DNA of 63,819 nt, counting the filler, from Octopus bimaculoides (taxonomy: Eukaryota), in NCBI RefSeq assembly GCF_001194135.2. It is 5 parts of 4 records of this genome, joined end to end, with 100 filler letters (N's around TTAATTAATTAA, not from the genome) between each part and the next. Parts side by side here need not be neighbours in the genome. Positions count along the whole stretch, not along the records: positions 30,974 to 59,544 come from NC_068989.1; 4 more parts are not named here. The stretch is one strand, 5' to 3'. Made by a program: the position numbers and the translations under genes. The notes below the pieces were generated by a model. It had not been told where the DNA came from and searched no databases. It was given only the letters and a program-made list of their open reading frames with translations. Below, in pieces: positions 37,959 to 57,696 of this stretch. How positions within the stretch are numbered: position 1 is the first letter of the stretch; every line of letters starts with the position of its first letter.

Positions 37959-38174
37959 GAAGTCTATGAGGATTACTTAATAAAGGTTTTGAAGTGTTAA
38001 GGTGATTTTTCGAAAAGAGTTTTTAAAAAATGCTACTAAACTTTTTGAGAAGTTTTTTTCTAGTGTGTGAGCGCTTTCGTTAAACCTTTTCAAACACACG
38101 AGTTCGGATGGATGAATGTGTATTTATGTTTTGACAGAATTTGATTGCAGAATGTGAAGACGGATGTAATACCT

Positions 38175-38636
38175 ATTTCGTTATTGCCCACAAGGGGCTA
38201 AACATAGAGGGAACAAACAAGAACAGACGAACGGATTAAGTCGATTACATCGACCCCAGTGCGTAACTGGTACTTAATTTATCGACTCCGAAAGGATGAA
38301 AGGCAAAGTCGACCTCGGCGGAATTTGAACTCAGAACGTAACGGCAGACGAAATACCGCTAAGCATTTCGCCCGGCGTGCTAACGTTTCTGCCAGCTCGC
38401 CGCCTTAACGATTCTTTTTTACTCTAGGAACAAGGCCCGAAATTTTGGGGGCGGCCGCCGGTCGATTAGATCGACTCCAGTATGCAACTGGTACTCAAAT
38501 TATCGACTCCGAAAGGATGAAAGGCAAAGTCAACCTCGGCGGAATTTGAACTCAGAACGTAAAGACAGACGATGCATAGCGATATCGCTATGCACTTCGC
38601 CCGGCGTGCTAACGATTTCAGCAGCTCACCGCCTTC
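38175..38636 (-). mobile_element. Two tandem SINE family B copies with different 3' tails
   Basis: Heads GGCGGCGAGCTGGCAG end at about 38406 and 38636; shared core GTCGACTTTGCCTTTCATCCTTTCGGAGTCGATAA. Confidence 0.85.
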
Positions 38637-39150
38637 GGCGAGGGCTTTAATATTGGAATAGTATTTAGATTTATTATCGCAAGTGCACGTAAACGAACAA
38701 TAAGAAAAAAAAATACAGAGCAAAGAACAACATTACAATTTAAATTTAAAATAAAATACTATTAACTTTATTACCGGTGTTAAAGAACCTAACACTGATA
38801 TCAATATTTGTTACCTTCAAGAAAAAAAGAAAACGCATTATGTAGAAATAATTTAAGATATTCAACAAGCCATTACATTCCCGGAGCATTATTCAATAAT
38901 TGAAAAATAACTAATGGCTACATTGTACTCGATGAAATTTAAAGATATCGAGCTCCGTATTTCACAGAGTATCAAGTCGCCTCTTTTATAAATTTGCAAG
39001 ATATTCGGTTATTTAGATAACAGTTATACATATTATATTAAACCCTTTCTCAACCAGGTATGAGGGGAGAACATGCTAACAACAGCAATTTTGCTTCTTT
39101 CCCAAAGACAGGGATATTTTGCTGCTTAAATCACGATTCTTAATTTTTGA

Positions 39151-40009: not shown

Positions 40010-40410
40010 CCCCTGGTGGGTAATAAAGAAATCGGTATTTCATCTGCCGCTACGTTCTGAGTTCAAATTCCGCCGAGGTCGACTTTACTTTTCATTCTTT
40101 CGGGGTCGACAAATTAAGTACCAGTTACGCACTGGAGTCTATGTAATCTACTTAATCCCTTTGTCTGTCCTTGTTTGTCTCCTCTATGTTTAGCCCCTTG
40201 TGGGCAATAAAGAACTAAGAAACAGCACACCGAGCGAAATGCTTAGCAGTATTTCGTCTGTCTTTACGTTCTGAGTTCAGATTCGACTTTGCCTTTCATT
40301 CTTTCGGGGTCGATAAGTTAAGTACCAGTTGCTTACTGGGTCGATCTAAGTCGACTGGTCCCCTCACCCTGCCAAAAAAATTTCGAGTCTTGTGCCTAGG
40401 GTAGGAAAGA
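40010..40410 (+). mobile_element. Two tandem SINE family B copies
   Basis: GTTCTGAGTTCAAATTCCGCCGAGGTCGACTTT core; the two copies end in different tails. Confidence 0.75.
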
Positions 40411-40659
40411 ACATTTCTACATAAAGAAGGGCAATTTCAAATTTGAGGATCATCAATTATTATGAAAGTCTACTCTTAAAGTGACTGACTGCATTTGACT
40501 CAATAATCATCTTTGATCTGGGGGCTGTTTGAGCGTAAATTAATACCAATTTGAATTGATCTTGCTTGAATAGGTTCACTATCTTACTAGTTCGTTGAAT
40601 AATTTCTTAGAAAATTATGTGCGCGTGCGTGTTTGTGAGTGTATGTGTGTTTTATTCTT

Positions 40660-41340
<681 letters not shown>

Positions 41341-42166
41341 AAAGAGTGAAAGAGAAAAGGTGGGAGAGACTCCCAATTCGAGCATCTGCATTGCATTCGG
41401 TCTGAATGCCTGTAACATGGTGAAGTCATCTAAAGACACGAAGGGAATATGTGTTGGTGCTTAACCGAACGCTGTGTAAGACCTATCAGATTAATACCTT
41501 TCAATTTCAAAGGTAAAAAAATCAGTTTGTAGATATATGCAAAATAACTGTTGAGGGTTGTGTCCAATAGATGCTATTTTTTAATTACATTTTTTACGCA
41601 GCTAAACAAATCTTCACATTTATCAATACCATTTGTATTGAGCTTACGTTGTATTTAATTTTTAGAGTATGCTTTCTCAAATTTGAATCTGTTTACGACC
41701 ATGTACACACTCATGTTTCATGTCGTATTTACTAACTCGCAAAGATGCACAGATTAGAACGTGAAGACGGCGAGCATGAAAAGTAGAGAAGCACTCTGAG
41801 TTGTTGGACAATGAGGTCACTAAATCAGACCCTTTGATTTGAAACTGAAACGCAGACATCTTAAGTCGAAATCTAAAATTTAAAAAAAAAAAAAAAAAAA
41901 AAGAAATCCATTGTTATTATTAAATTGTAACAAAACTGCTGCACGTATTCTAAGATTTTCTCAAGCTCTCACGCACACAAACATATAAATATAGGCAGTA
42001 AGCCATGTCCTATCTTTAAACATCGCACAGAACTGAAGACAGATAACAATAGTCTGAAACGCTTAACACTCTCTATCCAACCACTTCACTGCAGACGTCG
42101 AAGATTCGAGACATCGAAGCAAAGCTAGTCTTTTGTGAATGCTAGCATAATATTGAAATTGTCACA

Positions 42167-44917
42167 ATGAAATCGGTTAATATAAATACTAAAGATTGCA
42201 CGAAGGTTATTGTGTACGCGTTCGATAAAGTTTGTTTTGAAACTATGGTATTCCCTCACACGGTCGGTCATGAGTGCATGGCTTTTGCTATCCACCAACT
42301 TGGATTAACAGACGCAAGATATTTCGGTTTCCGTCATGTCACTAGTGACTTGAGAGTTGAATGGATTGATTTGAATAAACGTTTGGGAAAGCAACTCGAC
42401 AAAGATTGTAAGCAACATTGTTTTTATTTTGGAGTGATGTACTATATATCGCGTGCTTATAACATTAAAGATGAGGTTGCACTGTATCAGTATTTCAGGC
42501 AACTTCATGTTGATTATTTATATAGTCAGTATGATTGTTTACTTGAAAGGGCTATCAAACTGGCTTCGTTTTACCTTCGAGTGATTCTAGGTCCATACGA
42601 TCCCCAAAAGCATACGGCTGCGACAGTGAGCCGCCAGCTTCTTTTTCCTGTTAGCATATGGAAGGACGAGAAAATTGCTGCAGATGCTCAAGAAAAAGCT
42701 TTTCAGAATTACCAAACCCTTAATATAACTTCTAAAACTAGTATGGTTTTTTATATAATTGAATTCGAGTCTGCGACGTACTACGGACTAGAGTGTCACT
42801 CTGCCCTGCTTTCCGAGAGACGAGAGGCGGTGCATCTAATAACATCCTACAATGGTATCATGATAAAATATTTAACATCCCCTAATGCTTTACTCCTCAA
42901 GTGGTCAGATATTGTCGCAATCACACGCTCTCAAAAGTCTAGTATAATTATCCAACAGCAATCTCGCTCCATACAACTAGAACTGGCTGATAAGAACAGA
43001 GCAAAATATTTCTTCCAAATGGCTTTCCTTTTGATGCACTTTTATCAAGATAATCCAGAGTTCTGCGACAGATCGTCAAAGGAACCTGCCAAGCCTGACG
43101 GCTACGAATCTTACTCATTGCTGCTATCAACTTCTCAGTCGGAGACTCTGAGATCCGTTCTTCGTTACCAGCAGTCGCTGACTTCTATTCCTGACAACAT
43201 TCAGTTATCTCCAAAAACTCTTCATGAAGCTGCTGAAACTGCGGAATACCTCCTCGCACAACCCTCACGTCCAAAACAAACTGCTCTAGGTGCAACAGAA
43301 GCAATTGCTAGGCCATCGAAACCCGTAGCGAGTGTCAGAACTGCTGAGGTACGTCTTGATGAAGAATTTTTCTTGACTCATTCTAAGGATATAAAATATG
43401 AAGCGAAGAAACTTAACAAAGGTTGTCAAACGCAACCTTTTTTGACATCTATGATTAATGAGCGATTCCAGAAGTATACTGAAGCTAGTCCGATGCGTTT
43501 ACTTTCTCAAACTGTAAAAAATATTCTGCAGTATCTAGATGAAATAGAAAAGACGGAACGTGAAACCCAAGCGGATATTAAATCTAAACAAAGTACGGGA
43601 AAACATTTCTCCGATTCGCAACCATTGCAAGAATGTGGCATTCCTTATAGACCTCCACCCAAATATCCATTTCCAAAAACCAAGTCGAAGGATACGGACA
43701 TAGACTATACGAAACCTATTACCCCAGGGCAAATTTTGAAGAGAATTCAAGACATCCAAATACGAGATAAAAGCACTGAGGCTGTTTCACCCGCTAAATC
43801 GGAGAAAAGTAAAGAGTCAAAAGTTTCTGAAACTCCTATGCTGCCTAGTAGGGAGTACGCACGTCTGGAACCTGCGAAAAGTGAGCCAGTTCATCAATCC
43901 CTATCTAAAGCGGAGTTGTTGGCCCTAGATGAAAGTTCTAAAGGAGCTAAACATAAGCATTCCAAGAAGCCATTTATTATGGTGGCTTCAAATGCACTTA
44001 AAGAAATTCGAAGTAGAGATAAATATGAAAATCTGCAACGTAAATTAAATGAGGGCCAGGTTTTCGCTGAGTTTCGCTCAACTGGCGTAAAAAGTCAACA
44101 AATGCCTTGTTCTGTTGGTTATCATTTTGAAAACGCTATTAGAAACCGCTATCAATCTGTTGTACCTTATGACGAAAATCGTGTACAACTGACTGGAAGA
44201 CTTGAGAATGTATTCGGTTATATAAATGCGTCTAGTATAAAATGGAGACGCGGTCCGCATGAATTGAGCTTCATTGCAGCTCAAGCGCCGCTAAAAAATA
44301 ATCTCGAAGATTTTTGGCAAATGGTTTGGGAACAAAAGGTTTCTATAATAATTATGCTGAATTCTATAGATAACGAGAGTAAACTTGGCTGTTGTCTGTA
44401 CTGGCCTCAAGAATGGAATCTTGATCAAAAATTTCAGAGTGGACCGTTTACAGTTACTTTCCATACTTATAGGAGAACTCCCGAGTACTATTTGGATGTT
44501 CTGACTATCACCGATCCTTCTGGTGAGCAACAGCTAATAAGTAATCTTCATTTCACTCAATGGTCACAAGATGATTGTCCGTGTGATTTATCAATTTTTG
44601 TCAGCTTTTTGGAAGAGATTGAATCTGTACAAAATCTTATGCGCACTAAACATCCCGTCCAAGCTCCTATCGCTGTGCTGTGTCATGATGGAGTTGGTCG
44701 TACTGGTGTCCTAATAATGTCTTATATTATGAAATATTGTCTAAAGTGTGACCTTGAAATGAATCTGCAAAATTTGCTTGGCTTCCTCCGCTCCAATAGA
44801 ATGCTTATGGTTACTTCATTAAAACAATATATTTCCGTTTATGAAGCTTTGATTTATTTCCTGAAAGGACAATTTTCTCCTCCAAAAACGTATCTCGTTG
44901 GTCCATTTAAGATTTAA
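42167..44917 (+). CDS. PTPN14-like: Single-exon FERM-domain protein tyrosine phosphatase-like protein (PTPN14/PTPN21/Pez family), probable pseudophosphatase
   Basis: 916-aa uninterrupted ORF with in-frame TAG upstream (42143-42145). N-terminal FERM (YFGF..WIDLNKRLGKQLDK..FYFGVMYY..YQYF); RPPPKYP; LQRKLNEGQVFAEF helix typical of PTPN14/21; NRY, YINAS, IAAQAP, DFWQMVWEQ, CX5R motif, RMLMV...QY. Confidence 0.92.
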   Translation: MKSVNINTKDCTKVIVYAFDKVCFETMVFPHTVGHECMAFAIHQLGLTDARYFGFRHVTSDLRVEWIDLNKRLGKQLDKDCKQHCFYFGVMYYISRAYNIKDEVALYQYFRQLHVDYLYSQYDCLLERAIKLASFYLRVILGPYDPQKHTAATVSRQLLFPVSIWKDEKIAADAQEKAFQNYQTLNITSKTSMVFYIIEFESATYYGLECHSALLSERREAVHLITSYNGIMIKYLTSPNALLLKWSDIVAITRSQKSSIIIQQQSRSIQLELADKNRAKYFFQMAFLLMHFYQDNPEFCDRSSKEPAKPDGYESYSLLLSTSQSETLRSVLRYQQSLTSIPDNIQLSPKTLHEAAETAEYLLAQPSRPKQTALGATEAIARPSKPVASVRTAEVRLDEEFFLTHSKDIKYEAKKLNKGCQTQPFLTSMINERFQKYTEASPMRLLSQTVKNILQYLDEIEKTERETQADIKSKQSTGKHFSDSQPLQECGIPYRPPPKYPFPKTKSKDTDIDYTKPITPGQILKRIQDIQIRDKSTEAVSPAKSEKSKESKVSETPMLPSREYARLEPAKSEPVHQSLSKAELLALDESSKGAKHKHSKKPFIMVASNALKEIRSRDKYENLQRKLNEGQVFAEFRSTGVKSQQMPCSVGYHFENAIRNRYQSVVPYDENRVQLTGRLENVFGYINASSIKWRRGPHELSFIAAQAPLKNNLEDFWQMVWEQKVSIIIMLNSIDNESKLGCCLYWPQEWNLDQKFQSGPFTVTFHTYRRTPEYYLDVLTITDPSGEQQLISNLHFTQWSQDDCPCDLSIFVSFLEEIESVQNLMRTKHPVQAPIAVLCHDGVGRTGVLIMSYIMKYCLKCDLEMNLQNLLGFLRSNRMLMVTSLKQYISVYEALIYFLKGQFSPPKTYLVGPFKI

Positions 44918-45017: not shown

Positions 45018-45023
45018 AATAAA
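45018..45023 (+). terminator. Candidate polyadenylation signal for the FERM-PTP gene
   Basis: AATAAA 100 nt after the stop codon; weak evidence in AT-rich DNA. Confidence 0.35.
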
Positions 45024-45372: not shown

Positions 45373-45414
<42 letters not shown>

Positions 45415-47349: not shown

Positions 47350-47765
47350 GGGCGGCGAGCTGGCAGAAGCGTCAGCACGCCGGGCGAAATGCTTAGTATT
47401 ACGCCTGTCAGTACGTTCTGAGTTCAAATTCTGCTGAGGTCGACTTTGCCTTTCATCCTTTCGGAGTCGATAAATTAAGTACCAGTTGCATACTGGAGTC
47501 GATCTAATCGACTGGTCTCCTCCCCAAAAATTTCGAGCCGTGTGCCTAGAGTAGAAACGAATATCTTACTGGCAGAAATGTTAGCACGCCGGAAAAAATG
47601 CCTTGCAGCATTTCGTCTGCTGTTATGTTCTGAGTTCAAATTCCGCCGAGGTCGACTTTGCCTTTCATCCTATCGGGCTCGATAAAATAAGTACTAGTTG
47701 AGCACTGGGGCCGATGTAATCGACTTAGCTCCTCCCCATGAAATTGCTAGCCTTGTATTAAAATT
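47350..47765 (+). mobile_element. Nested SINE family B pair
   Basis: Young copy at about 47350-47562 is flanked by a 17-bp direct repeat AATATCTTACTGGCAGA (47333-47349 / 47560-47576) that includes the head of the second copy. Confidence 0.85.
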
Positions 47766-47971
47766 TGAAATCAATATTTTGCTATTCAATATTGCCGAAA
47801 TATCGATCAACAGATACATCTTCCAATGTTATTTCCAACTTGTGAGAGCTGCAATATATGGTTGCAATTTTTGCTTGAAACATATACTTTACAAAATTCA
47901 TACAACTTAATTGAAAGCATTAACGTCACAACATCCAATATTATCCTTTTGAGATATACGGTATATTTACA

Positions 47972-49510: not shown

Positions 49511-50511
49511 CGCAACGGACGGAGTATCAATAAGCAACAACATTAGCGTAAGTGGGTAAAATCGTTTCAATCTCAAATTGAAAGTTAAACAAATAACTAT
49601 TCTAACTTTGGACACAAGGTCAGCAATTTTTGAGGTCACAGAGCAAGGTCGATTACATTGGTCCTAGCACTTGGCATATAATGTTTTATCTTATCGACCG
49701 CCGAAAGGATGAAAGTCAAAGCTGACCTCGGCGGATTTGAACTCAGAACGTAAAGAACCGGAAGAAATGTAGCTAAGCATTTTGTCCAGCATGATAATGA
49801 TTTTGCCAACCTATCGCTTTAATTATCTTTTCTACAATAGATACAGGGCCTGATACAGGGTACTTGTGCGTTGATTTCACGAGCCGGCTGTTCCATTGAT
49901 CGGATCAACTGCAACTCTCTTCGTAACTGACGGACTGTCAGTTTTTTAAAATTTTTTTATTTTTTTTACGTGAAATGAAGTTTTGCTCAGGAATACAACG
50001 CACCACCTGATCATACGAAGGTGAGTGCAATACTTTAATAAACTCAGCCAGGCATCTTCACTGCTCATCTGCTTAGCAGAACAAAACCTGTAAAGGTACA
50101 AAGCTTTTGTGGTTATGGTCTGCGTGTTTTTATCAAAACCCCCTGGTTAATAGAGTATAATTAATTAGAAAATGATATTCATGGTTTTCTGGAGGTATTA
50201 CAGAATCTTTACGTAAGCGTTTAACTATGATCTTTTGGGCATTCACACGTGGTTGAATATTAAGCTGTGGCGTGTCGACGGTTTAGCTGAAACCGACAAT
50301 CGCAAATTGAGCTAATTTGTAAAATCACAAACTGTGACAAGAATACACACTAGTTTGTGGTATACAAGGTGGATTCTTCCATACCAGACACGATCACAGT
50401 TGAGAGTTTATGCATTGCTACACATTACATCTATGCAAAAACACTCATTAAACACCTGATATATATATATTTTGCTGTAAATATATATTTATAGTTTAGG
50501 CGGTGAGAGAG

Positions 50512-52098
50512 AGCGGCGAGTCGGCAGGATCGTTAGCACACCGGATAAAATGCTTAGCAACACTTCGTCCGGCGTACTGCCCAGATCGTTAGCACGCCGG
50601 TGAAAATGTTTAGCAATATTTCATCAGTCTACACGTTCCGAGTTCAAATTCCGCCGAGGTTGACATTGCCTTTCATCCTTTCGGACCCGGTGAAATAAGT
50701 ACCAGTTAAACACTGGGGTTGATGTAACCTACTTACACCTCCCCCTCACCCAAATTGCTAGCCTTATGCCAAAAATTTGAAAGGCGGCAGAATCGAGCTG
50801 GTAGAATCATTACCGTGCCGGACAAAAGGCTCAGCGGCATTTTGTCTGTATTTAACGTTCTGAGTTCAAATTCCACCCTGGTCGGCTTTCCTCCGAGATC
50901 GATTTTGCCTTTCATCCTTTTTGGGGTCGATAAATTAAGTACCAGTTGTGTACTGGAGTCGATCTAATCAACTGGCTCCTCCCCACAAATTTCAGGCCTT
51001 GTGTCTAGAGTAGAAAAGAATTTCATCTATTGTTGTTATTTTTTATATTAAAATAAGTATCCGCCAATATTCAAAAGAAATTTTGAAATATAAAAATAAC
51101 TGCGTCATACAGTAAAATTGAACTCGTGACCTAGTTTGGTCTGTAGTAATTTTGTTGCTCACTCAACGAAGTTTCTTGAGAAAGATATGATTGCCTTGTG
51201 TTGACGGTCATGATAATAAAAGTAAATGGATCCTCCGTCGGTTTCGACAATCACTATTCCAATTATTTGATCAGGGGGACTACCTAGGCATTATAATACG
51301 AATGGTTAAGGTGGTGACTTGGCAGGAACGTTAGCACGCCGGACAAAATGCTTAGCAGTATTTCGTCAGTTTTGACATTCTGAGTTCAAATTCCACCGAG
51401 GTCGACTTTACCTGTCATCCTTTCGGGCTCGATAAAGTAAGTACCAGTTGCGTACTGGGGTCGATCTAATCGACTGGCCCCCCTCCCCAGAAGTTTCGGG
51501 CCTCGTGCCTAGAGTGGAAAAGAATACGAATGGTTAAGGTGGTGAGCTGGCAGAATCGTTAGCACACTGGGCAAAATGCTGAGCGGTATTTCGTCTGTCT
51601 TTACGTTCTGAGTTCAAATTCCACTGAGGTCGACTTTGCCTTTTATCCTTTCGGGGTCGATAAAATAATTACTAACTGAGCCCTAGGGTCGATATAATCG
51701 ATTAGTCTCATCTCCACGAAAATTTCAGGTCTTGTGACTACAGCTGAGAGGATTATAATATGAGTGTTTGAGGCGGCGAACTGGCAGAATCGCTAGAGCA
51801 TCAGAAAATTTCATGGTGGCATTCATTCCGGGCCTTTGGATTTTGAGTTCAATTCCTGCCAAAGTCAGCTTTGCGTTTCATGCATTCAGCGTCGACAAAA
51901 GTACTAATAAACTAATGGGATCGATGTAATCGACTAACCCTCTTTCCCTAAAATTGCTGGCCCTAAGCTAAAATTTAAAACCGTTATGAGTGGTTAGGGT
52001 GGCGTACTGGCAGAGTCGCTAGAGCGTCCGACAAACTGCTGGGCAGTATTTCTTCCGACCCATTACGTTCTCAGTTCAAATCCCGCCGAGGTCAACTA
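50512..52098 (+). mobile_element. Head-to-tail stack of at least six SINE family B copies
   Basis: Heads near 50512, 50782, 51310, 51538, 51772 and 51998, all on the + strand; extra partial head near 50585. Confidence 0.85.
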
Positions 52099-55386: not shown

Positions 55387-57696
55387 ATGGATAACGAATT
55401 TGTGAACTATGTTAAAACTGAGACCAAGGTAAATGAGAAGTCTTTGACAAATCTGGAAGGATATAACCAGGATAGTTCAGTTAAATCAACCGTGATTGGA
55501 CAGCCAAGTACGTCAATGGAAATTAATGGAAATATTTCCACAGAGACCTGTCAACTGCAGGACACACTGTATGCAGAAAGTAACAACACAACAGACACGT
55601 CATATCCGAAGGTCCTGTCTAATGCTGAACCTAATTTCTTCCAATCGACTTTGAACGAAGCGACAGATTCGCAAATGTATGTTCCTGTAGTTAACAACAC
55701 TTTCAGCGAATTAGCTGATGGAAACAACATTGAGGGGGACAGTTTTAAACCAGAAAATATTGAAGAAGTAAAACTTATGAACACATCGTCGGCGAAATGT
55801 GACATAGAATCTGGTGAGGTCATTCAGGATGCCATTTTAATAGAACAAAAACAAAGTTCGGTAGAGTTATCTGAAAATATTTTTCCTGTAGTAACTGATA
55901 CACACGCGCTTAATTCTGAGGAATTACATATCACCGGAAATCTTACTAACCTATCAGAAGGTGATTTGAATTTCAGCACTGGCATCGAAGGTGTATGTGG
56001 TTCATACACCGAAACAGAAGTTGCTCCTGATTACATCCAAGTTTCGTCTCACAAAGTAGCAGAGTTTTCTACAGAACCTACACGTGAAAGAGCTGAAAAA
56101 CTCGAAGAGAATCTGAAAAATGTTTCAACATCTGCGTCGTCTTATTATGAAGAAGTAGGAAATGTTGAAAGCGTTAATCCCGAAATAATTGAAAAACCGT
56201 CCGTATTTTCTGTTGGAGATGTCGATAGCTCACTGGAAATCCTTGAAGAGAAACCTGAAGTCGTTTCTTTTAATCAATTTACATTAAAGACCGAAACAAT
56301 TGGAGGAGACAAAATATTAGAAGAGAGAACAAATGTGGAAATAACCGAAGAATTAAATGTGCAAAACGCAACCATAGACAATATGATGGTATCAGAACAC
56401 TTTGAAATTGTCGAGAAAGGAAACGTGGAAACCGATAGCAATTTTATTGGGACACCCAAAGATAATGATTCTACCGTTTTATTTGAACAAGTTGACGTAC
56501 AGGTCGAAGAATTTGGAATTTCTGCTTCAACAAAACCGTTGATGACTTCTATCGAACAATCTGAAAATTTTAAAATGAATATTCCAAATGAAACGGAAAC
56601 ATCGTTTCCCGGGAAAATTCTTCCGTCCAGGGAAGACAGTGGTTTACTTGAAAACATGGTAGCTGTTGCACCTTTGGTAGAAAACCAAACGGTTGTAGTT
56701 CAAAAGGAAGAAATGTTATTGTTGGAAAACGAAGACAATAATGTTGTTGATATGACAGTAAAAGGGGTAAAACTTATAGAAACGATTGTGAATGAACCGG
56801 CTGAAGAAATTTCTAGAGAACCAATGGGAAGTCTTAAGATTGCCACTGAACTCTCAAAAGTCCAGGAAGAAAATAAAGTGAAAATAACAGAATTTGAAGC
56901 TGTAGAAAACCACGTTCCAACAAAGAAATTAACTGAAATAGAAAGTCATGATATAAAAACCTTTTCTATGGCAGATAAAAATACGATGGAAGCACCAACA
57001 TATATTGGAGCTGAAGTTTCTTCGAACGAAAACATCGACGTATTTTCAGTGAAACCAAATGAAAGTACGAAACTCGATTCTCTAGAAACAGAAACGATTG
57101 TGACCACCAAAGATGTTGACAGACGTGAGAAGAAACCAGAGCACATTGTATCGAGTGAACGAAAGCAAATTCCAGTAACAATGACAGAAAATAATCGTCC
57201 AAGACAAACTGACATTCTAAGGTTGACCAGAGGAAAGACTAAACGCGAGGCGAAAATGATTATGTCACAGGTAGCATTTGATAGAGCTTCAGAAATATTG
57301 AAAATTGTTCAAAACAAATCGAATACATATGAAGATGGTATCTATGTTCACCCCACGCACCGGGCCTATGCCACAGAAATAAAAGACGGTAATATAAATC
57401 TTTTGAAATATATCAGGCTTAGTGATGGTCAGTTATCAGATGATTCCAATCATTACGAGTATTTGAAGTCATTCAAAAGCCAGAACCGTAATGGCTATAT
57501 CAACATGAAAATCAATGGGAGGAAACGGCGTAAAATGGTTGGTCGATTCATCTACGAATGCTGTAACAAAATTACTTTGCTGGAAAATATAGCCATAAAT
57601 TACATTGATGGTAATAAACAGAATCAAAACCCTTCAAACTTATCGATTCAGATCGAATATGGCGGAGGAGAAAAACACAAAAATAAAACAAAGTAA
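55387..57696 (+). CDS. Single-exon 769-aa acidic (Glu-rich) protein with C-terminal degenerate NUMOD4/HNH-like domain
   Basis: 2.3-kb non-repetitive ORF in AT-rich DNA, in-frame TAA upstream (55372-55374), AATAAA at 57732. C-terminus GYINMK...KMVGRFIYEC...INYIDGNKQNQNPSNL aligns by eye to HNH_3 GY.......VHR.V.E.F....V.HIDGNK.NN...NL. Confidence 0.8.
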   Translation: MDNEFVNYVKTETKVNEKSLTNLEGYNQDSSVKSTVIGQPSTSMEINGNISTETCQLQDTLYAESNNTTDTSYPKVLSNAEPNFFQSTLNEATDSQMYVPVVNNTFSELADGNNIEGDSFKPENIEEVKLMNTSSAKCDIESGEVIQDAILIEQKQSSVELSENIFPVVTDTHALNSEELHITGNLTNLSEGDLNFSTGIEGVCGSYTETEVAPDYIQVSSHKVAEFSTEPTRERAEKLEENLKNVSTSASSYYEEVGNVESVNPEIIEKPSVFSVGDVDSSLEILEEKPEVVSFNQFTLKTETIGGDKILEERTNVEITEELNVQNATIDNMMVSEHFEIVEKGNVETDSNFIGTPKDNDSTVLFEQVDVQVEEFGISASTKPLMTSIEQSENFKMNIPNETETSFPGKILPSREDSGLLENMVAVAPLVENQTVVVQKEEMLLLENEDNNVVDMTVKGVKLIETIVNEPAEEISREPMGSLKIATELSKVQEENKVKITEFEAVENHVPTKKLTEIESHDIKTFSMADKNTMEAPTYIGAEVSSNENIDVFSVKPNESTKLDSLETETIVTTKDVDRREKKPEHIVSSERKQIPVTMTENNRPRQTDILRLTRGKTKREAKMIMSQVAFDRASEILKIVQNKSNTYEDGIYVHPTHRAYATEIKDGNINLLKYIRLSDGQLSDDSNHYEYLKSFKSQNRNGYINMKINGRKRRKMVGRFIYECCNKITLLENIAINYIDGNKQNQNPSNLSIQIEYGGGEKHKNKTK

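What the first reader, a model, noticed from the sequence alone, without database searches (positions are those of the whole stretch)
44141..44830. Pez/PTPN14-like protein with three catalytic loops rewired: candidate pseudophosphatase
SEEN: the PTP domain keeps RNRY (659-662), YINAS, DFWQMVWEQ, the nucleophile Cys839 and Arg845. However, WPDHGCP reads WSQDDCP (general-acid Asp replaced by Gln801), VHCSAGVGRTG reads VLCHDGVGRTG, and the Q-loop M[IV]QT reads MVTS (Thr883 at the PTP1B Gln262 position). KNOWN: loss of the WPD Asp together with the P-loop Ala-to-Asp change is the pair of substitutions that inactivates IA-2/PTPRN. INFERENCE: little or no phosphatase activity; it may act as a substrate trap, scaffold or redox sensor.
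Basis: partly seen in the sequence, partly recalled or inferred. Interest (0 to 1): 0.7.

Follow-up and report, generated by a model that had tools for sequence, protein, structure and literature searches.

The report
Octopus extra Pez gene, dead phosphatase
Octopus bimaculoides carries, beside its normal Pez/PTPN14 gene, a second fast-evolving copy whose phosphatase active site has lost most catalytic residues while the gene stays intact, so it is most likely one more non-catalytic "pseudophosphatase" in a family that loses activity repeatedly.

Summary
Window 42167-44917 (+) is one uninterrupted 916-codon ORF of Octopus bimaculoides: a FERM domain, a disordered linker with one PPxY motif, and a classical PTP domain. 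The PTP domain reads RNRY, WSQDDCP, VLCHDGVGRTG and MVTS. The P-loop and Q-loop changes are identical in O. vulgaris and O. sinensis; the old general-acid position varies (Gln or Gly). They are therefore real and fixed, not assembly errors.

It is not the species' Pez orthologue. A canonical Pez with WPDHGCP, VHCSAGVGRTG and MVQT lies on another chromosome. The window gene is a divergent paralogue, 36-42% identical to cephalopod Pez and sister to it in an NJ tree (88% bootstrap).

It evolves about seven times faster in protein sequence (dN/dS 0.64 against 0.08) but is still under selection:
- Neutral simulation gave 0 of 5000 stop-free ORFs.
- All three CDS indels are 3 bp.
- Recent replacements avoid fold-conserved sites.

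Best reading: a catalytically dead or crippled Pez paralogue acting through FERM, PPxY and PTP-fold docking. Activity and expression are untested.

Novelty is modest. Human PTPN14 and PTPN21 are already near-inert, and I found degenerate P-loops in Pez proteins of Hydra, a nematode, Hemiptera, Diptera and a teleost.

The parts
42167..44917 (+). Complete single-exon ORF of 916 aa plus stop: the divergent Pez/PTPN14-21 paralogue of Octopus bimaculoides
   Evidence: ORF listing. The exact protein is on record at GCA_001194135.2 CM046609.1. Orthologous intact 915-aa ORF in O. vulgaris, L005 5308-8055.
42191..43066 (+). FERM domain (about aa 9-300; lobes F1-F3)
   Evidence: Pfam FERM_N and FERM_M. 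PDB PTPN21 FERM, E about 1e-31, aa 10-296. AF2 pLDDT 77-93. Foldseek 8gvl_A TM 0.92. dN/dS 0.50.
43067..44014 (+). Linker (aa 301-616), predicted disordered. About 316 aa against about 510 aa in canonical Pez.
   Evidence: AF2 pLDDT below 50 over 302-454 and 467-607. dN/dS 0.72.
43655..43666 (+). PPKY (aa 497-500): the one retained PPxY motif and a candidate WW-domain ligand. It aligns with the family's PPPPYPR motif.
   Evidence: Motif position. P497, P498, P501 and P503 fall in nearly invariant columns of alignment A1. PPKY is retained in O. sinensis and O. vulgaris.
44015..44872 (+). Classical PTP domain (aa 617-902), fold retained
   Evidence: Pfam PF00102, 198 bits. AF2 pLDDT 72-90. Foldseek 6iwd_A (PTPN14) TM 0.89. 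It keeps 53 of 80 family-invariant columns.
44141..44152 (+). pTyr-recognition loop RNRY (aa 659-662). It has Tyr where 98% of canonical Pez sequences have Phe.
44387..44389 (+). Gly741, replacing the family's Lys of the K-C-x-x-Y-W-P motif (Leu in O. vulgaris and O. sinensis). The adjacent Cys742 is retained.
   Evidence: The surrounding loop 735-742 has pLDDT below 50.
44561..44581 (+). WPD-loop equivalent WSQDDCP (aa 799-805). Pro800 is Ser. The general-acid Asp is Gln801 (Gly in O. vulgaris and O. sinensis). Asp802 and Asp803 are conserved.
44675..44707 (+). P-loop VLCHDGVGRTG (aa 837-847). Cys839 and Arg845 are kept. His838Leu, Ser840His and Ala841Asp are changed.
   Evidence: Identical in three Octopus species.
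44807..44818 (+). Q-loop MVTS (aa 881-884). The first Gln is Thr883 and Thr is Ser884. The second Gln (Gln887) is kept.
45018..45023 (+). AATAAA, 101 nt after the stop codon: a candidate polyadenylation signal (unverified)
   Evidence: Read directly from the sequence.

Best explanation
The window holds a real protein-coding, single-exon gene of Octopus bimaculoides. It is an additional, highly divergent paralogue of the FERM-PTP protein Pez (the PTPN14/PTPN21 family). It arose from the cephalopod Pez lineage and now evolves about seven times faster in protein sequence than the canonical copy.

Its PTP domain keeps the fold, the nucleophile Cys839, Arg845 and the pTyr-pocket Tyr662. It has lost:
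- the general acid (Asp to Gln or Gly) and the loop's Pro;
- the His before the Cys;
- the P-loop Ser and Ala (now His and Asp);
- the Lys of the KCxxYWP motif;
- the first Q-loop Gln.

I therefore expect phosphotyrosine hydrolysis to be abolished or reduced by orders of magnitude (inferred). The protein would then act non-catalytically, as canonical Pez/PTPN14 largely does. The FERM domain would give localisation, the retained PPxY would engage a WW-domain partner such as Yorkie/YAP or Kibra, and the PTP fold would serve as a docking module (inferred).
For: SHOWN
- The ORF and its domains.
- Motif states, and their identity in O. vulgaris and O. sinensis.
- His838, Ala841 and Gln883 lie in columns 99-100% conserved in 129 canonical Pez domains.
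- A canonical O. bimaculoides Pez (XP_014778688.1) with intact WPDHGCP, VHCSAGVGRTG and MVQT lies on another chromosome.
- The paralogue is 36% (FERM) and 42% (PTP) identical to cephalopod Pez and less to every other Pez. In an NJ tree it is sister to coleoid Pez with 88% bootstrap, 98% for FERM alone.
- Selection: dN/dS is 0.64 (bootstrap interval 0.47-0.875), against 0.082 for canonical Pez in the same species pair at similar dS.
- 228 neutral substitutions would give a mean of 9.1 stop codons. None of 5000 simulations stayed open.
- The CDS has three indels, all of 3 bp. The 3 kb of flanks have 36, of which 12 are multiples of three.
- O. bimaculoides/O. vulgaris replacements hit 7.5% of family-conserved columns against 21.3% of variable ones (p = 0.013).
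- Both domains are predicted folded and Pez-like.

LITERATURE
- Two variant residues inactivate IA-2, and back-mutation restores activity (PMC11802530, PMC7320164).
- Changing the WPD Asp to Glu already costs about three orders of magnitude in PTP1B. PTPD1, PTPD2 and HDPTP are inert on phosphopeptides (PMC2638020).
- Q-loop Gln-to-Ala mutants greatly reduce PTPN21 turnover (PMC10901363).
- PTPN14 restrains YAP through its PPxY motifs, independently of phosphatase activity (PMC4929422).
Against: - No enzymatic, binding or expression data exist for this protein.
- The CX5R core, the Thr after the Arg, Tyr662 and the second Q-loop Gln are kept.
- Asp802 and Asp803, directly after the lost general acid, are conserved in all three species. 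A displaced general acid cannot be excluded.
- dN/dS of the PTP domain alone (0.70, interval 0.46-1.15) is not distinguishable from 1 by that test.
- PTPN21 was long called dead and has weak real activity (PMC10901363), so prediction from motifs has failed before in this family.
- The O. sinensis assembly has a 1-bp deletion in the linker.
- Only one of the family's two PPxY-type motifs is retained, and its WW binding is untested.
Confidence: 0.7

Rival explanations
1. It is an active phosphatase with a rewired mechanism or a different substrate. Asp802 or Asp803 would serve as a displaced general acid. The His-Asp in the P-loop and the Thr in the Q-loop would retune the pocket for a non-pTyr substrate, for example a lipid or another phospho-compound.
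For: - Cys839, Arg845, Thr846, Gly842, Gly844 and Tyr662 are kept.
- Asp802 and Asp803 are conserved in three species while residue 801 varies.
- The WPE-bearing PTPRQ prefers phospholipids, and PTPN21 has weak activity despite its WPE loop (PMC2638020, PMC10901363).
Against: - Five or more catalytic-site positions are changed at once, including the invariant His before the Cys and the P-loop Ala-to-Asp change that helps inactivate IA-2.
- The high dN/dS and the varying residue 801 suggest relaxed rather than retuned constraint.
- PTPD1, PTPD2 and HDPTP showed no lipid or inositol-phosphate activity when tested (PMC2638020).
Confidence: 0.1
2. It is a natural substrate trap or dominant-negative Pez. 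The domain would still bind phosphotyrosine proteins but could not release them, or it would compete with canonical Pez for FERM and PPxY partners. Either way it would protect or sequester targets.
For: - Loss of the general acid together with loss of the first Q-loop Gln mimics the engineered PTP1B Asp181Ala/Gln262Ala trapping mutant (my own knowledge).
- Tyr662, Cys839 and Arg845 are kept.
- PTPRU is described as a pseudophosphatase that sequesters substrates (PMC7320164, PMC9900141).
- PPKY and the FERM fold are kept.
Against: - An Asp in the P-loop, loss of the Lys of KCxxYWP and loss of the Asp after NRY (RNRYQS against RNRFQD) should weaken phosphate and peptide binding.
- No binding data exist.
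Confidence: 0.13
3. It is a non-functional relic: a duplicated or retroposed copy drifting toward pseudogenisation. The open frame would then be incidental.
For: - dN/dS is high, and for the PTP domain alone is not significantly below 1.
- The O. sinensis assembly has a frameshift that splits the gene model.
- CDS nucleotide divergence (8.2%) is close to that of the 3' flank (8.5%) against O. sinensis.
- No transcript evidence could be obtained.
Against: - None of 5000 neutral simulations kept the ORF open, with a mean of 9.1 stops expected.
- A full-length ORF is intact in both O. bimaculoides and O. vulgaris despite roughly 60% protein divergence from the parent.
- Only 3-bp indels occur in the CDS, at about an eleven-fold lower density than in the flanks.
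- Whole-gene dN/dS is below 1 (1 of 500 bootstrap replicates, 0.2%, reached 1).
- Replacements avoid fold-conserved sites.
- 11 of 18 O. sinensis/O. vulgaris substitutions fall at third codon positions.
- The O. sinensis deletion sits next to two further mismatches and is absent from its close relative O. vulgaris. A local assembly error is plausible.
Confidence: 0.07

Closest known systems
Canonical Pez / PTPN14 (PTPD2) and PTPN21 (PTPD1), the NT6 FERM-PTP subfamily, including the octopus's own Pez XP_014778688.1
   Same: - The same architecture: FERM, then a long disordered linker with PPxY, then a C-terminal PTP domain.
- The best sequence and fold matches for both domains.
- It groups with cephalopod Pez in the tree.
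- The family already works largely non-catalytically and is near-inert in vitro (PMC2638020, PMC4929422).
   Different: - It is a paralogue, not the orthologue.
- It is only 36-42% identical to cephalopod Pez.
- The linker is about 200 aa shorter, and one of the two PPxY-type motifs is lost.
- The conserved C-terminal LKN(T/S)RLI tail is replaced by LKGQFSPPKTYLVGPFKI.
- The P-loop, WPD loop and Q-loop are all degenerate, whereas canonical Pez keeps VHCSAGVGRTG and MVQT.
- dN/dS is 0.64 against 0.08.
IA-2 / PTPRN and IA-2beta / PTPRN2 (R8 receptor pseudophosphatases)
   Same: The WPD general acid is lost and the P-loop Ala is replaced by Asp, while the Cys and Arg are retained. In IA-2 these two residues account for inactivity (Magistrelli 1996, cited in PMC11802530 and PMC7320164).
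   Different: - It is unrelated within the PTP tree: a cytosolic FERM protein, not a granule transmembrane receptor.
- The changes are convergent.
- The octopus protein additionally loses the His before the Cys, the P-loop Ser and the Q-loop Gln.
HD-PTP / PTPN23 and PTPRU D1 (classical-PTP pseudophosphatases with several altered loops)
   Same: Several catalytic motifs are altered at once while the nucleophile Cys is retained. Scaffold or sequestering functions have been proposed for them (PMC2638020, PMC7320164, PMC9900141).
   Different: They belong to different subfamilies, with different domain contexts and different substitutions: WPE, a P-loop Ser or Thr, and a disordered pTyr loop in PTPRU.
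Other Pez-family proteins with degenerate P-loops found here
   Same: All show independent loss of catalytic residues inside the same family.
- Diaphorina citri: HCSDGVEKTG
- Hydra vulgaris: HCEDGSSRTG
- Steinernema hermaphroditum: VVCQDGTRDSG
- Hermetia illucens: HCSEGGGRSG
- Condylostylus longicornis: INCRDGAGRSG
- Lycorma delicatula: HCSSGVGLSA
- Scleropages formosus paralogue: HCSTGAGQTG
- Echinoderm WPN or WPH, and mammalian PTPN21 WPE

   Different: The insect proteins carry the names Pez, PTPN14 or PTPN21. I did not check whether they are the only Pez in those genomes. In Octopus an intact canonical copy coexists with the degenerate one.

Membership tests
Classical protein tyrosine phosphatase domain (Pfam PF00102) | Profile match above the curated cut-off, and the PTP fold | tested here: met
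   198.1 bits against a cut-off of 20.9. AF2 pLDDT 72-90. Foldseek TM 0.87-0.89 to the PTPN21 and PTPN14 PTP domains.
Classical protein tyrosine phosphatase domain (catalytically competent) | HC(X)5R(S/T) signature with the nucleophile Cys and the Arg | tested here: inconclusive
   Cys839, Arg845 and Thr846 are present. The His before the Cys is Leu, and X5 reads HDGVG instead of SAGVG.
Classical protein tyrosine phosphatase domain (catalytically competent) | WPD loop with the general-acid Asp | tested here: not met
   WSQDDCP. Gln801 (Gly in O. vulgaris and O. sinensis) aligns with the Asp, with no indel.
Classical protein tyrosine phosphatase domain (catalytically competent) | Q-loop Gln that positions the hydrolytic water | tested here: not met
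   MVTS instead of MVQT (Thr883). The second Gln (Gln887) is kept.
Classical protein tyrosine phosphatase domain (catalytically competent) | Measured phosphatase activity | not testable with these tools
   Needs the recombinant protein and pNPP, DiFMUP or phosphopeptide assays.
Pez / PTPN14 / PTPN21 (NT6) subfamily | N-terminal FERM, long linker and C-terminal PTP domain, each domain closest to PTPN14/21 | tested here: met
   The next-best full-length relatives are all Pez proteins.
Pez / PTPN14 / PTPN21 (NT6) subfamily | Phylogenetic grouping inside the family | tested here: met
   NJ tree: sister to coleoid Pez, inside molluscs. Bootstrap 88% for paralogue plus cephalopod Pez and 92% for paralogue plus molluscs. 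Only a distance method was used, and the branch is long.
Pez / PTPN14 / PTPN21 (NT6) subfamily | PPxY motifs in the linker | tested here: inconclusive
   One is kept (PPKY 497-500, conserved in three species). The family's first motif (YRPSPDY) has no counterpart. WW binding was not tested.
Pez / PTPN14 / PTPN21 (NT6) subfamily | Conserved C-terminal tail LKN(T/S)RLI | tested here: not met
   It ends ...LKGQFSPPKTYLVGPFKI. Arg903 and Leu904 of the family are Phe and Ser.
Orthologue of Pez in Octopus | It is the species' single copy at the conserved locus | tested here: not met
   The canonical Pez P0175 lies on CM046625.1, nested in a PAXNEB-domain gene, with the same arrangement in O. vulgaris. 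The window gene lies on CM046609.1.
Pseudophosphatase (bioinformatic definition: a phosphatase-family member with a mutation predicted to impair catalysis, PMC11802530) | A substitution at a catalytic residue predicted to impair activity | tested here: met
   General acid, His838, Ala841 and Gln883.
Processed pseudogene / retrocopy | Intronless copy of an intron-containing parent, with poly(A) tail, target-site duplications and disabling mutations | tested here: not met
   - The gene is intronless, but so is the canonical octopus Pez CDS (3375 bp for 1124 codons). That feature is therefore uninformative.
- No poly(A) tail adjoins the 3' end.
- There are no stops or frameshifts in O. bimaculoides or O. 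vulgaris.
- Target-site duplications were not looked for.

The most novel reading that the evidence does not exclude
The octopus lineage may have evolved a natural trapping or dominant-negative Pez. Losing the general acid together with the Q-loop Gln, while keeping Cys, Arg and the pocket Tyr, reproduces the engineered PTP1B substrate-trapping double mutant. Such a protein would sequester phosphotyrosine targets or Hippo-pathway partners (through FERM and PPxY) away from the canonical Pez. Its fast evolution would reflect an arms-race or tissue-specific regulatory role.
Probability: 0.12. Interest if true: 0.55.

Novelty: new member of a known kind. Interest (0 to 1): 0.3.

Why it matters
If the reading is right, Octopus offers a natural pair: a canonical Pez under strong constraint, and a fast-evolving paralogue with a dismantled active site. 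That pair could be used to separate the catalytic from the scaffolding roles of the PTPN14/PTPN21 family, a question still debated for the human proteins.

Together with the degenerate Pez proteins seen in Hydra, a nematode, Hemiptera, Diptera and a teleost, it also shows that this subfamily loses catalytic residues repeatedly. That pattern argues its conserved function is non-catalytic.

It does not open a new class of mechanism. Without expression or activity data it remains a sequence-level prediction.

Tried and rejected
1. Recent retrocopy of Pez. I first took the single-exon structure as a retrogene hallmark. The canonical octopus Pez CDS is also one exon, so the feature is uninformative. 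No poly(A) tail adjoins the gene. Target-site duplications were not looked for.

2. Pseudogene. This was suggested by the split O. sinensis gene models. I rejected it because O. vulgaris reads through, neutral simulation never keeps the ORF open, and the O. sinensis deletion sits in a cluster of three differences within 8 nt.

3. Dating the duplication with a crude protein clock. The domains disagree. FERM places the octopod-decapod split at 89 times the O. bimaculoides/O. vulgaris time and the duplication at 17 times. PTP gives 8.6 and 11.6. I abandoned the estimate. The NJ placement before the octopod-decapod split may also be long-branch attraction.

4. Using the absence of Logan (read-archive assembly) copies as evidence of no expression. 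The canonical octopus Pez cluster also has no Logan members, so this is uninformative.

5. Searching for orthologues in other cephalopods. The protein searches returned only O. bimaculoides, O. sinensis and O. vulgaris, and the next hit is at 38-39% identity. No tool here searches unannotated cephalopod genomes, so absence from decapods is not established.

6. The first word-indexed search returned only one hit. The exhaustive representative search was needed to see the family.

7. The 769-aa ORF at 55387-57696 has no Pfam match and no record. I did not pursue it.
Full report
**What is in the sequence.** The piece comes from Octopus bimaculoides, assembly GCA_001194135.2, chromosome record CM046609.1. 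Positions 42167-44917 on the + strand form one uninterrupted ORF of 916 codons. Pfam finds FERM_N, FERM_M and a strong Y_phosphatase match at aa 657-896 (198 bits, cut-off 20.9). Among solved structures, PTPN14 and PTPN21 are the best single-domain matches for the PTP half, though tandem-domain receptor PTP chains score higher overall. PTPN21 is the best match for the FERM half (aa 10-296, E about 1e-31).

An AlphaFold2 model built on a 26-sequence alignment predicts three parts:
- a folded FERM domain (aa 9-300, pLDDT 77-93);
- a disordered linker (302-607, pLDDT below 50, apart from one helix);
- a folded PTP domain (610-902, pLDDT 72-90), with only the loop 735-742 uncertain.

Foldseek returns the PTPN21 FERM domain (8gvl_A, TM 0.92) and the PTPN14 PTP domain (6iwd_A, TM 0.89) as the best structural matches.

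**Check of the observation.**
- RNRY 659-662
- YINAS 685-689
- DFWQMVWEQ 715-723
- WSQDDCP 799-805
- VLCHDGVGRTG 837-847
- MVTS 881-884

HMMER alignments to RPTP-alpha, PTP-sigma and LAR put these strings opposite WPDFGVP, VHCSAGVGRTG and MVQT with no gaps. Gln801 therefore occupies the general-acid position, Asp841 the P-loop Ala position, and Thr883 the first Q-loop Gln position.

I aligned 143 Pez-family PTP domains recovered in the searches. 129 of them have a canonical P-loop. In those 129, 80 columns are at least 95% conserved. The octopus protein keeps 53, including YINAS, FWQMVWE, YWP, C-x2-G-x-G-R-x-G and QY. It changes 27, including Lys741 (to Gly), Pro800 (Ser), His838 (Leu), Ser840 (His), Ala841 (Asp), Gln883 (Thr) and Thr884 (Ser). 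It is concentrated on residues that established PTP enzymology assigns to catalysis and substrate binding.

**Are the substitutions real and fixed?** The orthologous locus in O. sinensis (L001) is collinear with the window over 4.4 kb at 87.5% identity. The O. vulgaris locus (L005) carries an intact full-length ORF of 915 codons. Both species read WSGDDCP, VLCHDGVGRTG and MVTS. Three independent assemblies therefore agree on the P-loop and Q-loop changes. The old general-acid position varies (Gln or Gly), as expected if that residue no longer matters. Asp802 and Asp803 are conserved.

The O. sinensis assembly has a 1-bp deletion in the linker that splits the annotation into 571-aa and 311-aa models. 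O. vulgaris differs from O. sinensis at only 19 of 2748 positions and lacks the deletion. The deletion lies in a cluster of three differences within 8 nt. It is either a private lesion or, plausibly, an assembly error.

**It is a paralogue, not the octopus Pez.** An exhaustive search of 1.84 billion representative proteins found only the Octopus orthologues as close relatives (85% identity). The next hit is a cuttlefish-type Pez at 39%, followed by Pez proteins of other molluscs, echinoderms, arthropods and vertebrates. O. bimaculoides has a canonical Pez (XP_014778688.1, 1124 aa) on a different chromosome. It has RNRF, WPDHGCP, VHCSAGVGRTG, MVQT and the family's LKNTRLI tail.

That canonical CDS is itself a single exon, nested inside a PAXNEB-domain gene. 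The arrangement is the same in O. vulgaris. The intronless state of the window gene therefore says nothing about retroposition.

The paralogue is most similar to cephalopod Pez:
- FERM: 36%, against 28-35% for other molluscs and 24-29% for non-molluscs.
- PTP: 40-42%, against 35-40% for all others.

A bootstrapped NJ tree places it as sister to the coleoid Pez clade: 88% for FERM plus PTP, and 98% for FERM alone. The PTP domain alone is uninformative. The branch is very long, so the position below the octopod-decapod split may be an attraction artefact. A crude clock gave inconsistent dates. No decapod orthologue turned up, but unannotated cephalopod genomes could not be searched.

**Is it a living gene?** I compared the same species pair (O. 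bimaculoides and O. vulgaris), at similar synonymous divergence (dS 0.12-0.14), with the Nei-Gojobori method.

| Gene | Whole-gene dN/dS | FERM | Linker | PTP | Protein identity |
|---|---|---|---|---|---|
| Canonical Pez | 0.082 | 0.011 | 0.111 | 0.095 | 97.2% |
| Paralogue | 0.64 (bootstrap interval 0.47-0.875) | 0.50 | 0.72 | 0.70 (interval 0.46-1.15) | 84.5% |

Constraint is therefore strongly relaxed, but it is not absent:
- Placing the observed 228 substitutions at random creates a mean of 9.1 stop codons and never leaves the frame open (0 of 5000).
- The CDS has only three indels, each of 3 bp. The 3 kb of flanks have 36, and only a third are multiples of three.
- Within the PTP domain, recent replacements hit 7.5% of family-conserved columns against 21.3% of variable columns (Fisher p = 0.013).
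- 11 of 18 O. sinensis/O. vulgaris substitutions are at third codon positions.

Given also roughly 60% protein divergence from the parent with a 916-codon frame still open in two species, a drifting pseudogene is very unlikely.

**How it most likely works.** The sequence shows a Pez-type protein whose PTP fold is maintained but whose catalytic apparatus is dismantled. Established knowledge bears on this as follows:
- The WPD Asp is the general acid, and changing it to Glu alone costs about three orders of magnitude in PTP1B (PMC2638020).
- The Q-loop Gln positions the hydrolytic water (PMC7320164), and Q-loop mutants greatly reduce PTPN21 turnover (PMC10901363).
- IA-2 and IA-2beta are inactive because of two variant residues and regain activity on back-mutation (Magistrelli 1996, cited in PMC11802530 and PMC7320164). 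That these are the WPD Asp and the P-loop Ala, now Asp, is from my own knowledge.

I infer that the protein has little or no phosphotyrosine phosphatase activity.

The parent family already acts mainly as a scaffold. PTPD1, PTPD2 and HDPTP are inert on phosphopeptides (PMC2638020). PTPN14 restrains YAP through its PPxY motifs, independently of phosphatase activity (PMC4929422). The paralogue keeps a folded FERM domain and one PPxY motif (PPKY 497-500, conserved in three species and aligned to the family's PPPPYPR). The most economical mechanism is therefore non-catalytic: FERM-mediated localisation, WW-partner binding, and docking through the PTP fold. That step is inferred and untested.

Three alternatives remain, each with lower probability:
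- a displaced general acid (Asp802 or Asp803) or a new substrate;
- a natural substrate trap or dominant-negative competitor of canonical Pez;
- a dying gene.

**Comparison with what is known, and novelty.** In function it resembles the classical-PTP pseudophosphatases: IA-2 and IA-2beta, HD-PTP, PTPRU D1 and the receptor D2 domains. By descent it belongs to the Pez/PTPN14/PTPN21 subfamily, as a lineage-restricted paralogue rather than the orthologue. It fails two family features, the C-terminal LKNxRLI tail and the first PPxY-type motif.

Catalytic decay is not unusual in this subfamily. The same alignment shows degenerate P-loops in Pez proteins of:
- Diaphorina citri (HCSDGVEKTG);
- Hydra vulgaris (HCEDGSSRTG);
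- Steinernema hermaphroditum (VVCQDGTRDSG);
- Hermetia illucens and Condylostylus longicornis (Diptera);
- Lycorma delicatula;
- a Scleropages formosus paralogue.

WPE occurs in mammalian PTPN21, and WPN or WPH in echinoderms.

I found no paper on an octopus PTP pseudophosphatase. The gene is annotated only as 'PTPN14-like'. I therefore class it as a new member of a known kind. It is of moderate-to-low interest and useful mainly as a natural canonical/dead pair for dissecting the scaffold and catalytic roles of Pez.

Noticed in passing
L003 501-3875 (O. bimaculoides CM046625.1) and L004 1001-4384 (O. vulgaris OX597838.1): The canonical octopus Pez/PTPN14 CDS is a single exon (3375 bp for 1124 codons). 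It lies inside the span of a PAXNEB-domain (ELP4-like) gene on the same strand, in both species. I did not check whether Pez is intronless in other molluscs.
   Followed up: partly
L001 about 11700 (equivalent to window 43867): The O. sinensis assembly GCA_006345805.1 has a 1-bp deletion next to two further mismatches. It splits the orthologue into two gene models (571 aa, and 311 aa = XP_029641943.1). O. vulgaris reads through.
   Followed up: yes
L005 5308-8055: The O. vulgaris annotation CAI9728038.1 (684 aa) starts at an internal Met. The frame is open upstream to the same MKSV... start as in O. bimaculoides, which gives 915 aa.
   Followed up: yes
Proteins P0029, P0033, P0095, P0139, P0025, P0027, P0273, P0275, P0276: Pez-family proteins of Diaphorina, Hydra, Steinernema, Scleropages, Lycorma, Hermetia and Condylostylus have degenerate P-loops, WPD loops or Q-loops. 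Echinoderm Pez has WPN or WPH. Loss of catalytic residues recurs across the subfamily.
   Followed up: partly
window 55387-57696 (+): A 769-aa ORF rich in acidic and Ser/Thr/Asn residues. It has no Pfam match, and no gene with this exact product is on record. It may be a lineage-specific gene or exon, or a chance ORF.
   Followed up: partly
window 38137-38640, 40030-40415, 47351-47780, 49686-49810, 50585-51025, 51307-51760: Many copies of an interspersed repeat of about 170-400 bp. Each copy matches a dozen or more places in the O. sinensis locus L001 on both strands at 70-94% identity.
   Followed up: no
window 40697-40866, 41880-41903, 45375-45413: Simple repeats flank the gene: (AT)16 followed by (TG)69 upstream, an A run of about 24 bases 265 bp before the start codon, and T39 about 460 bp after the stop codon. 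Several N gaps lie elsewhere in the piece (about 32.4-32.8 kb, 33.6-33.8 kb, 35.1-35.3 kb and 58.1-58.7 kb).
   Followed up: no
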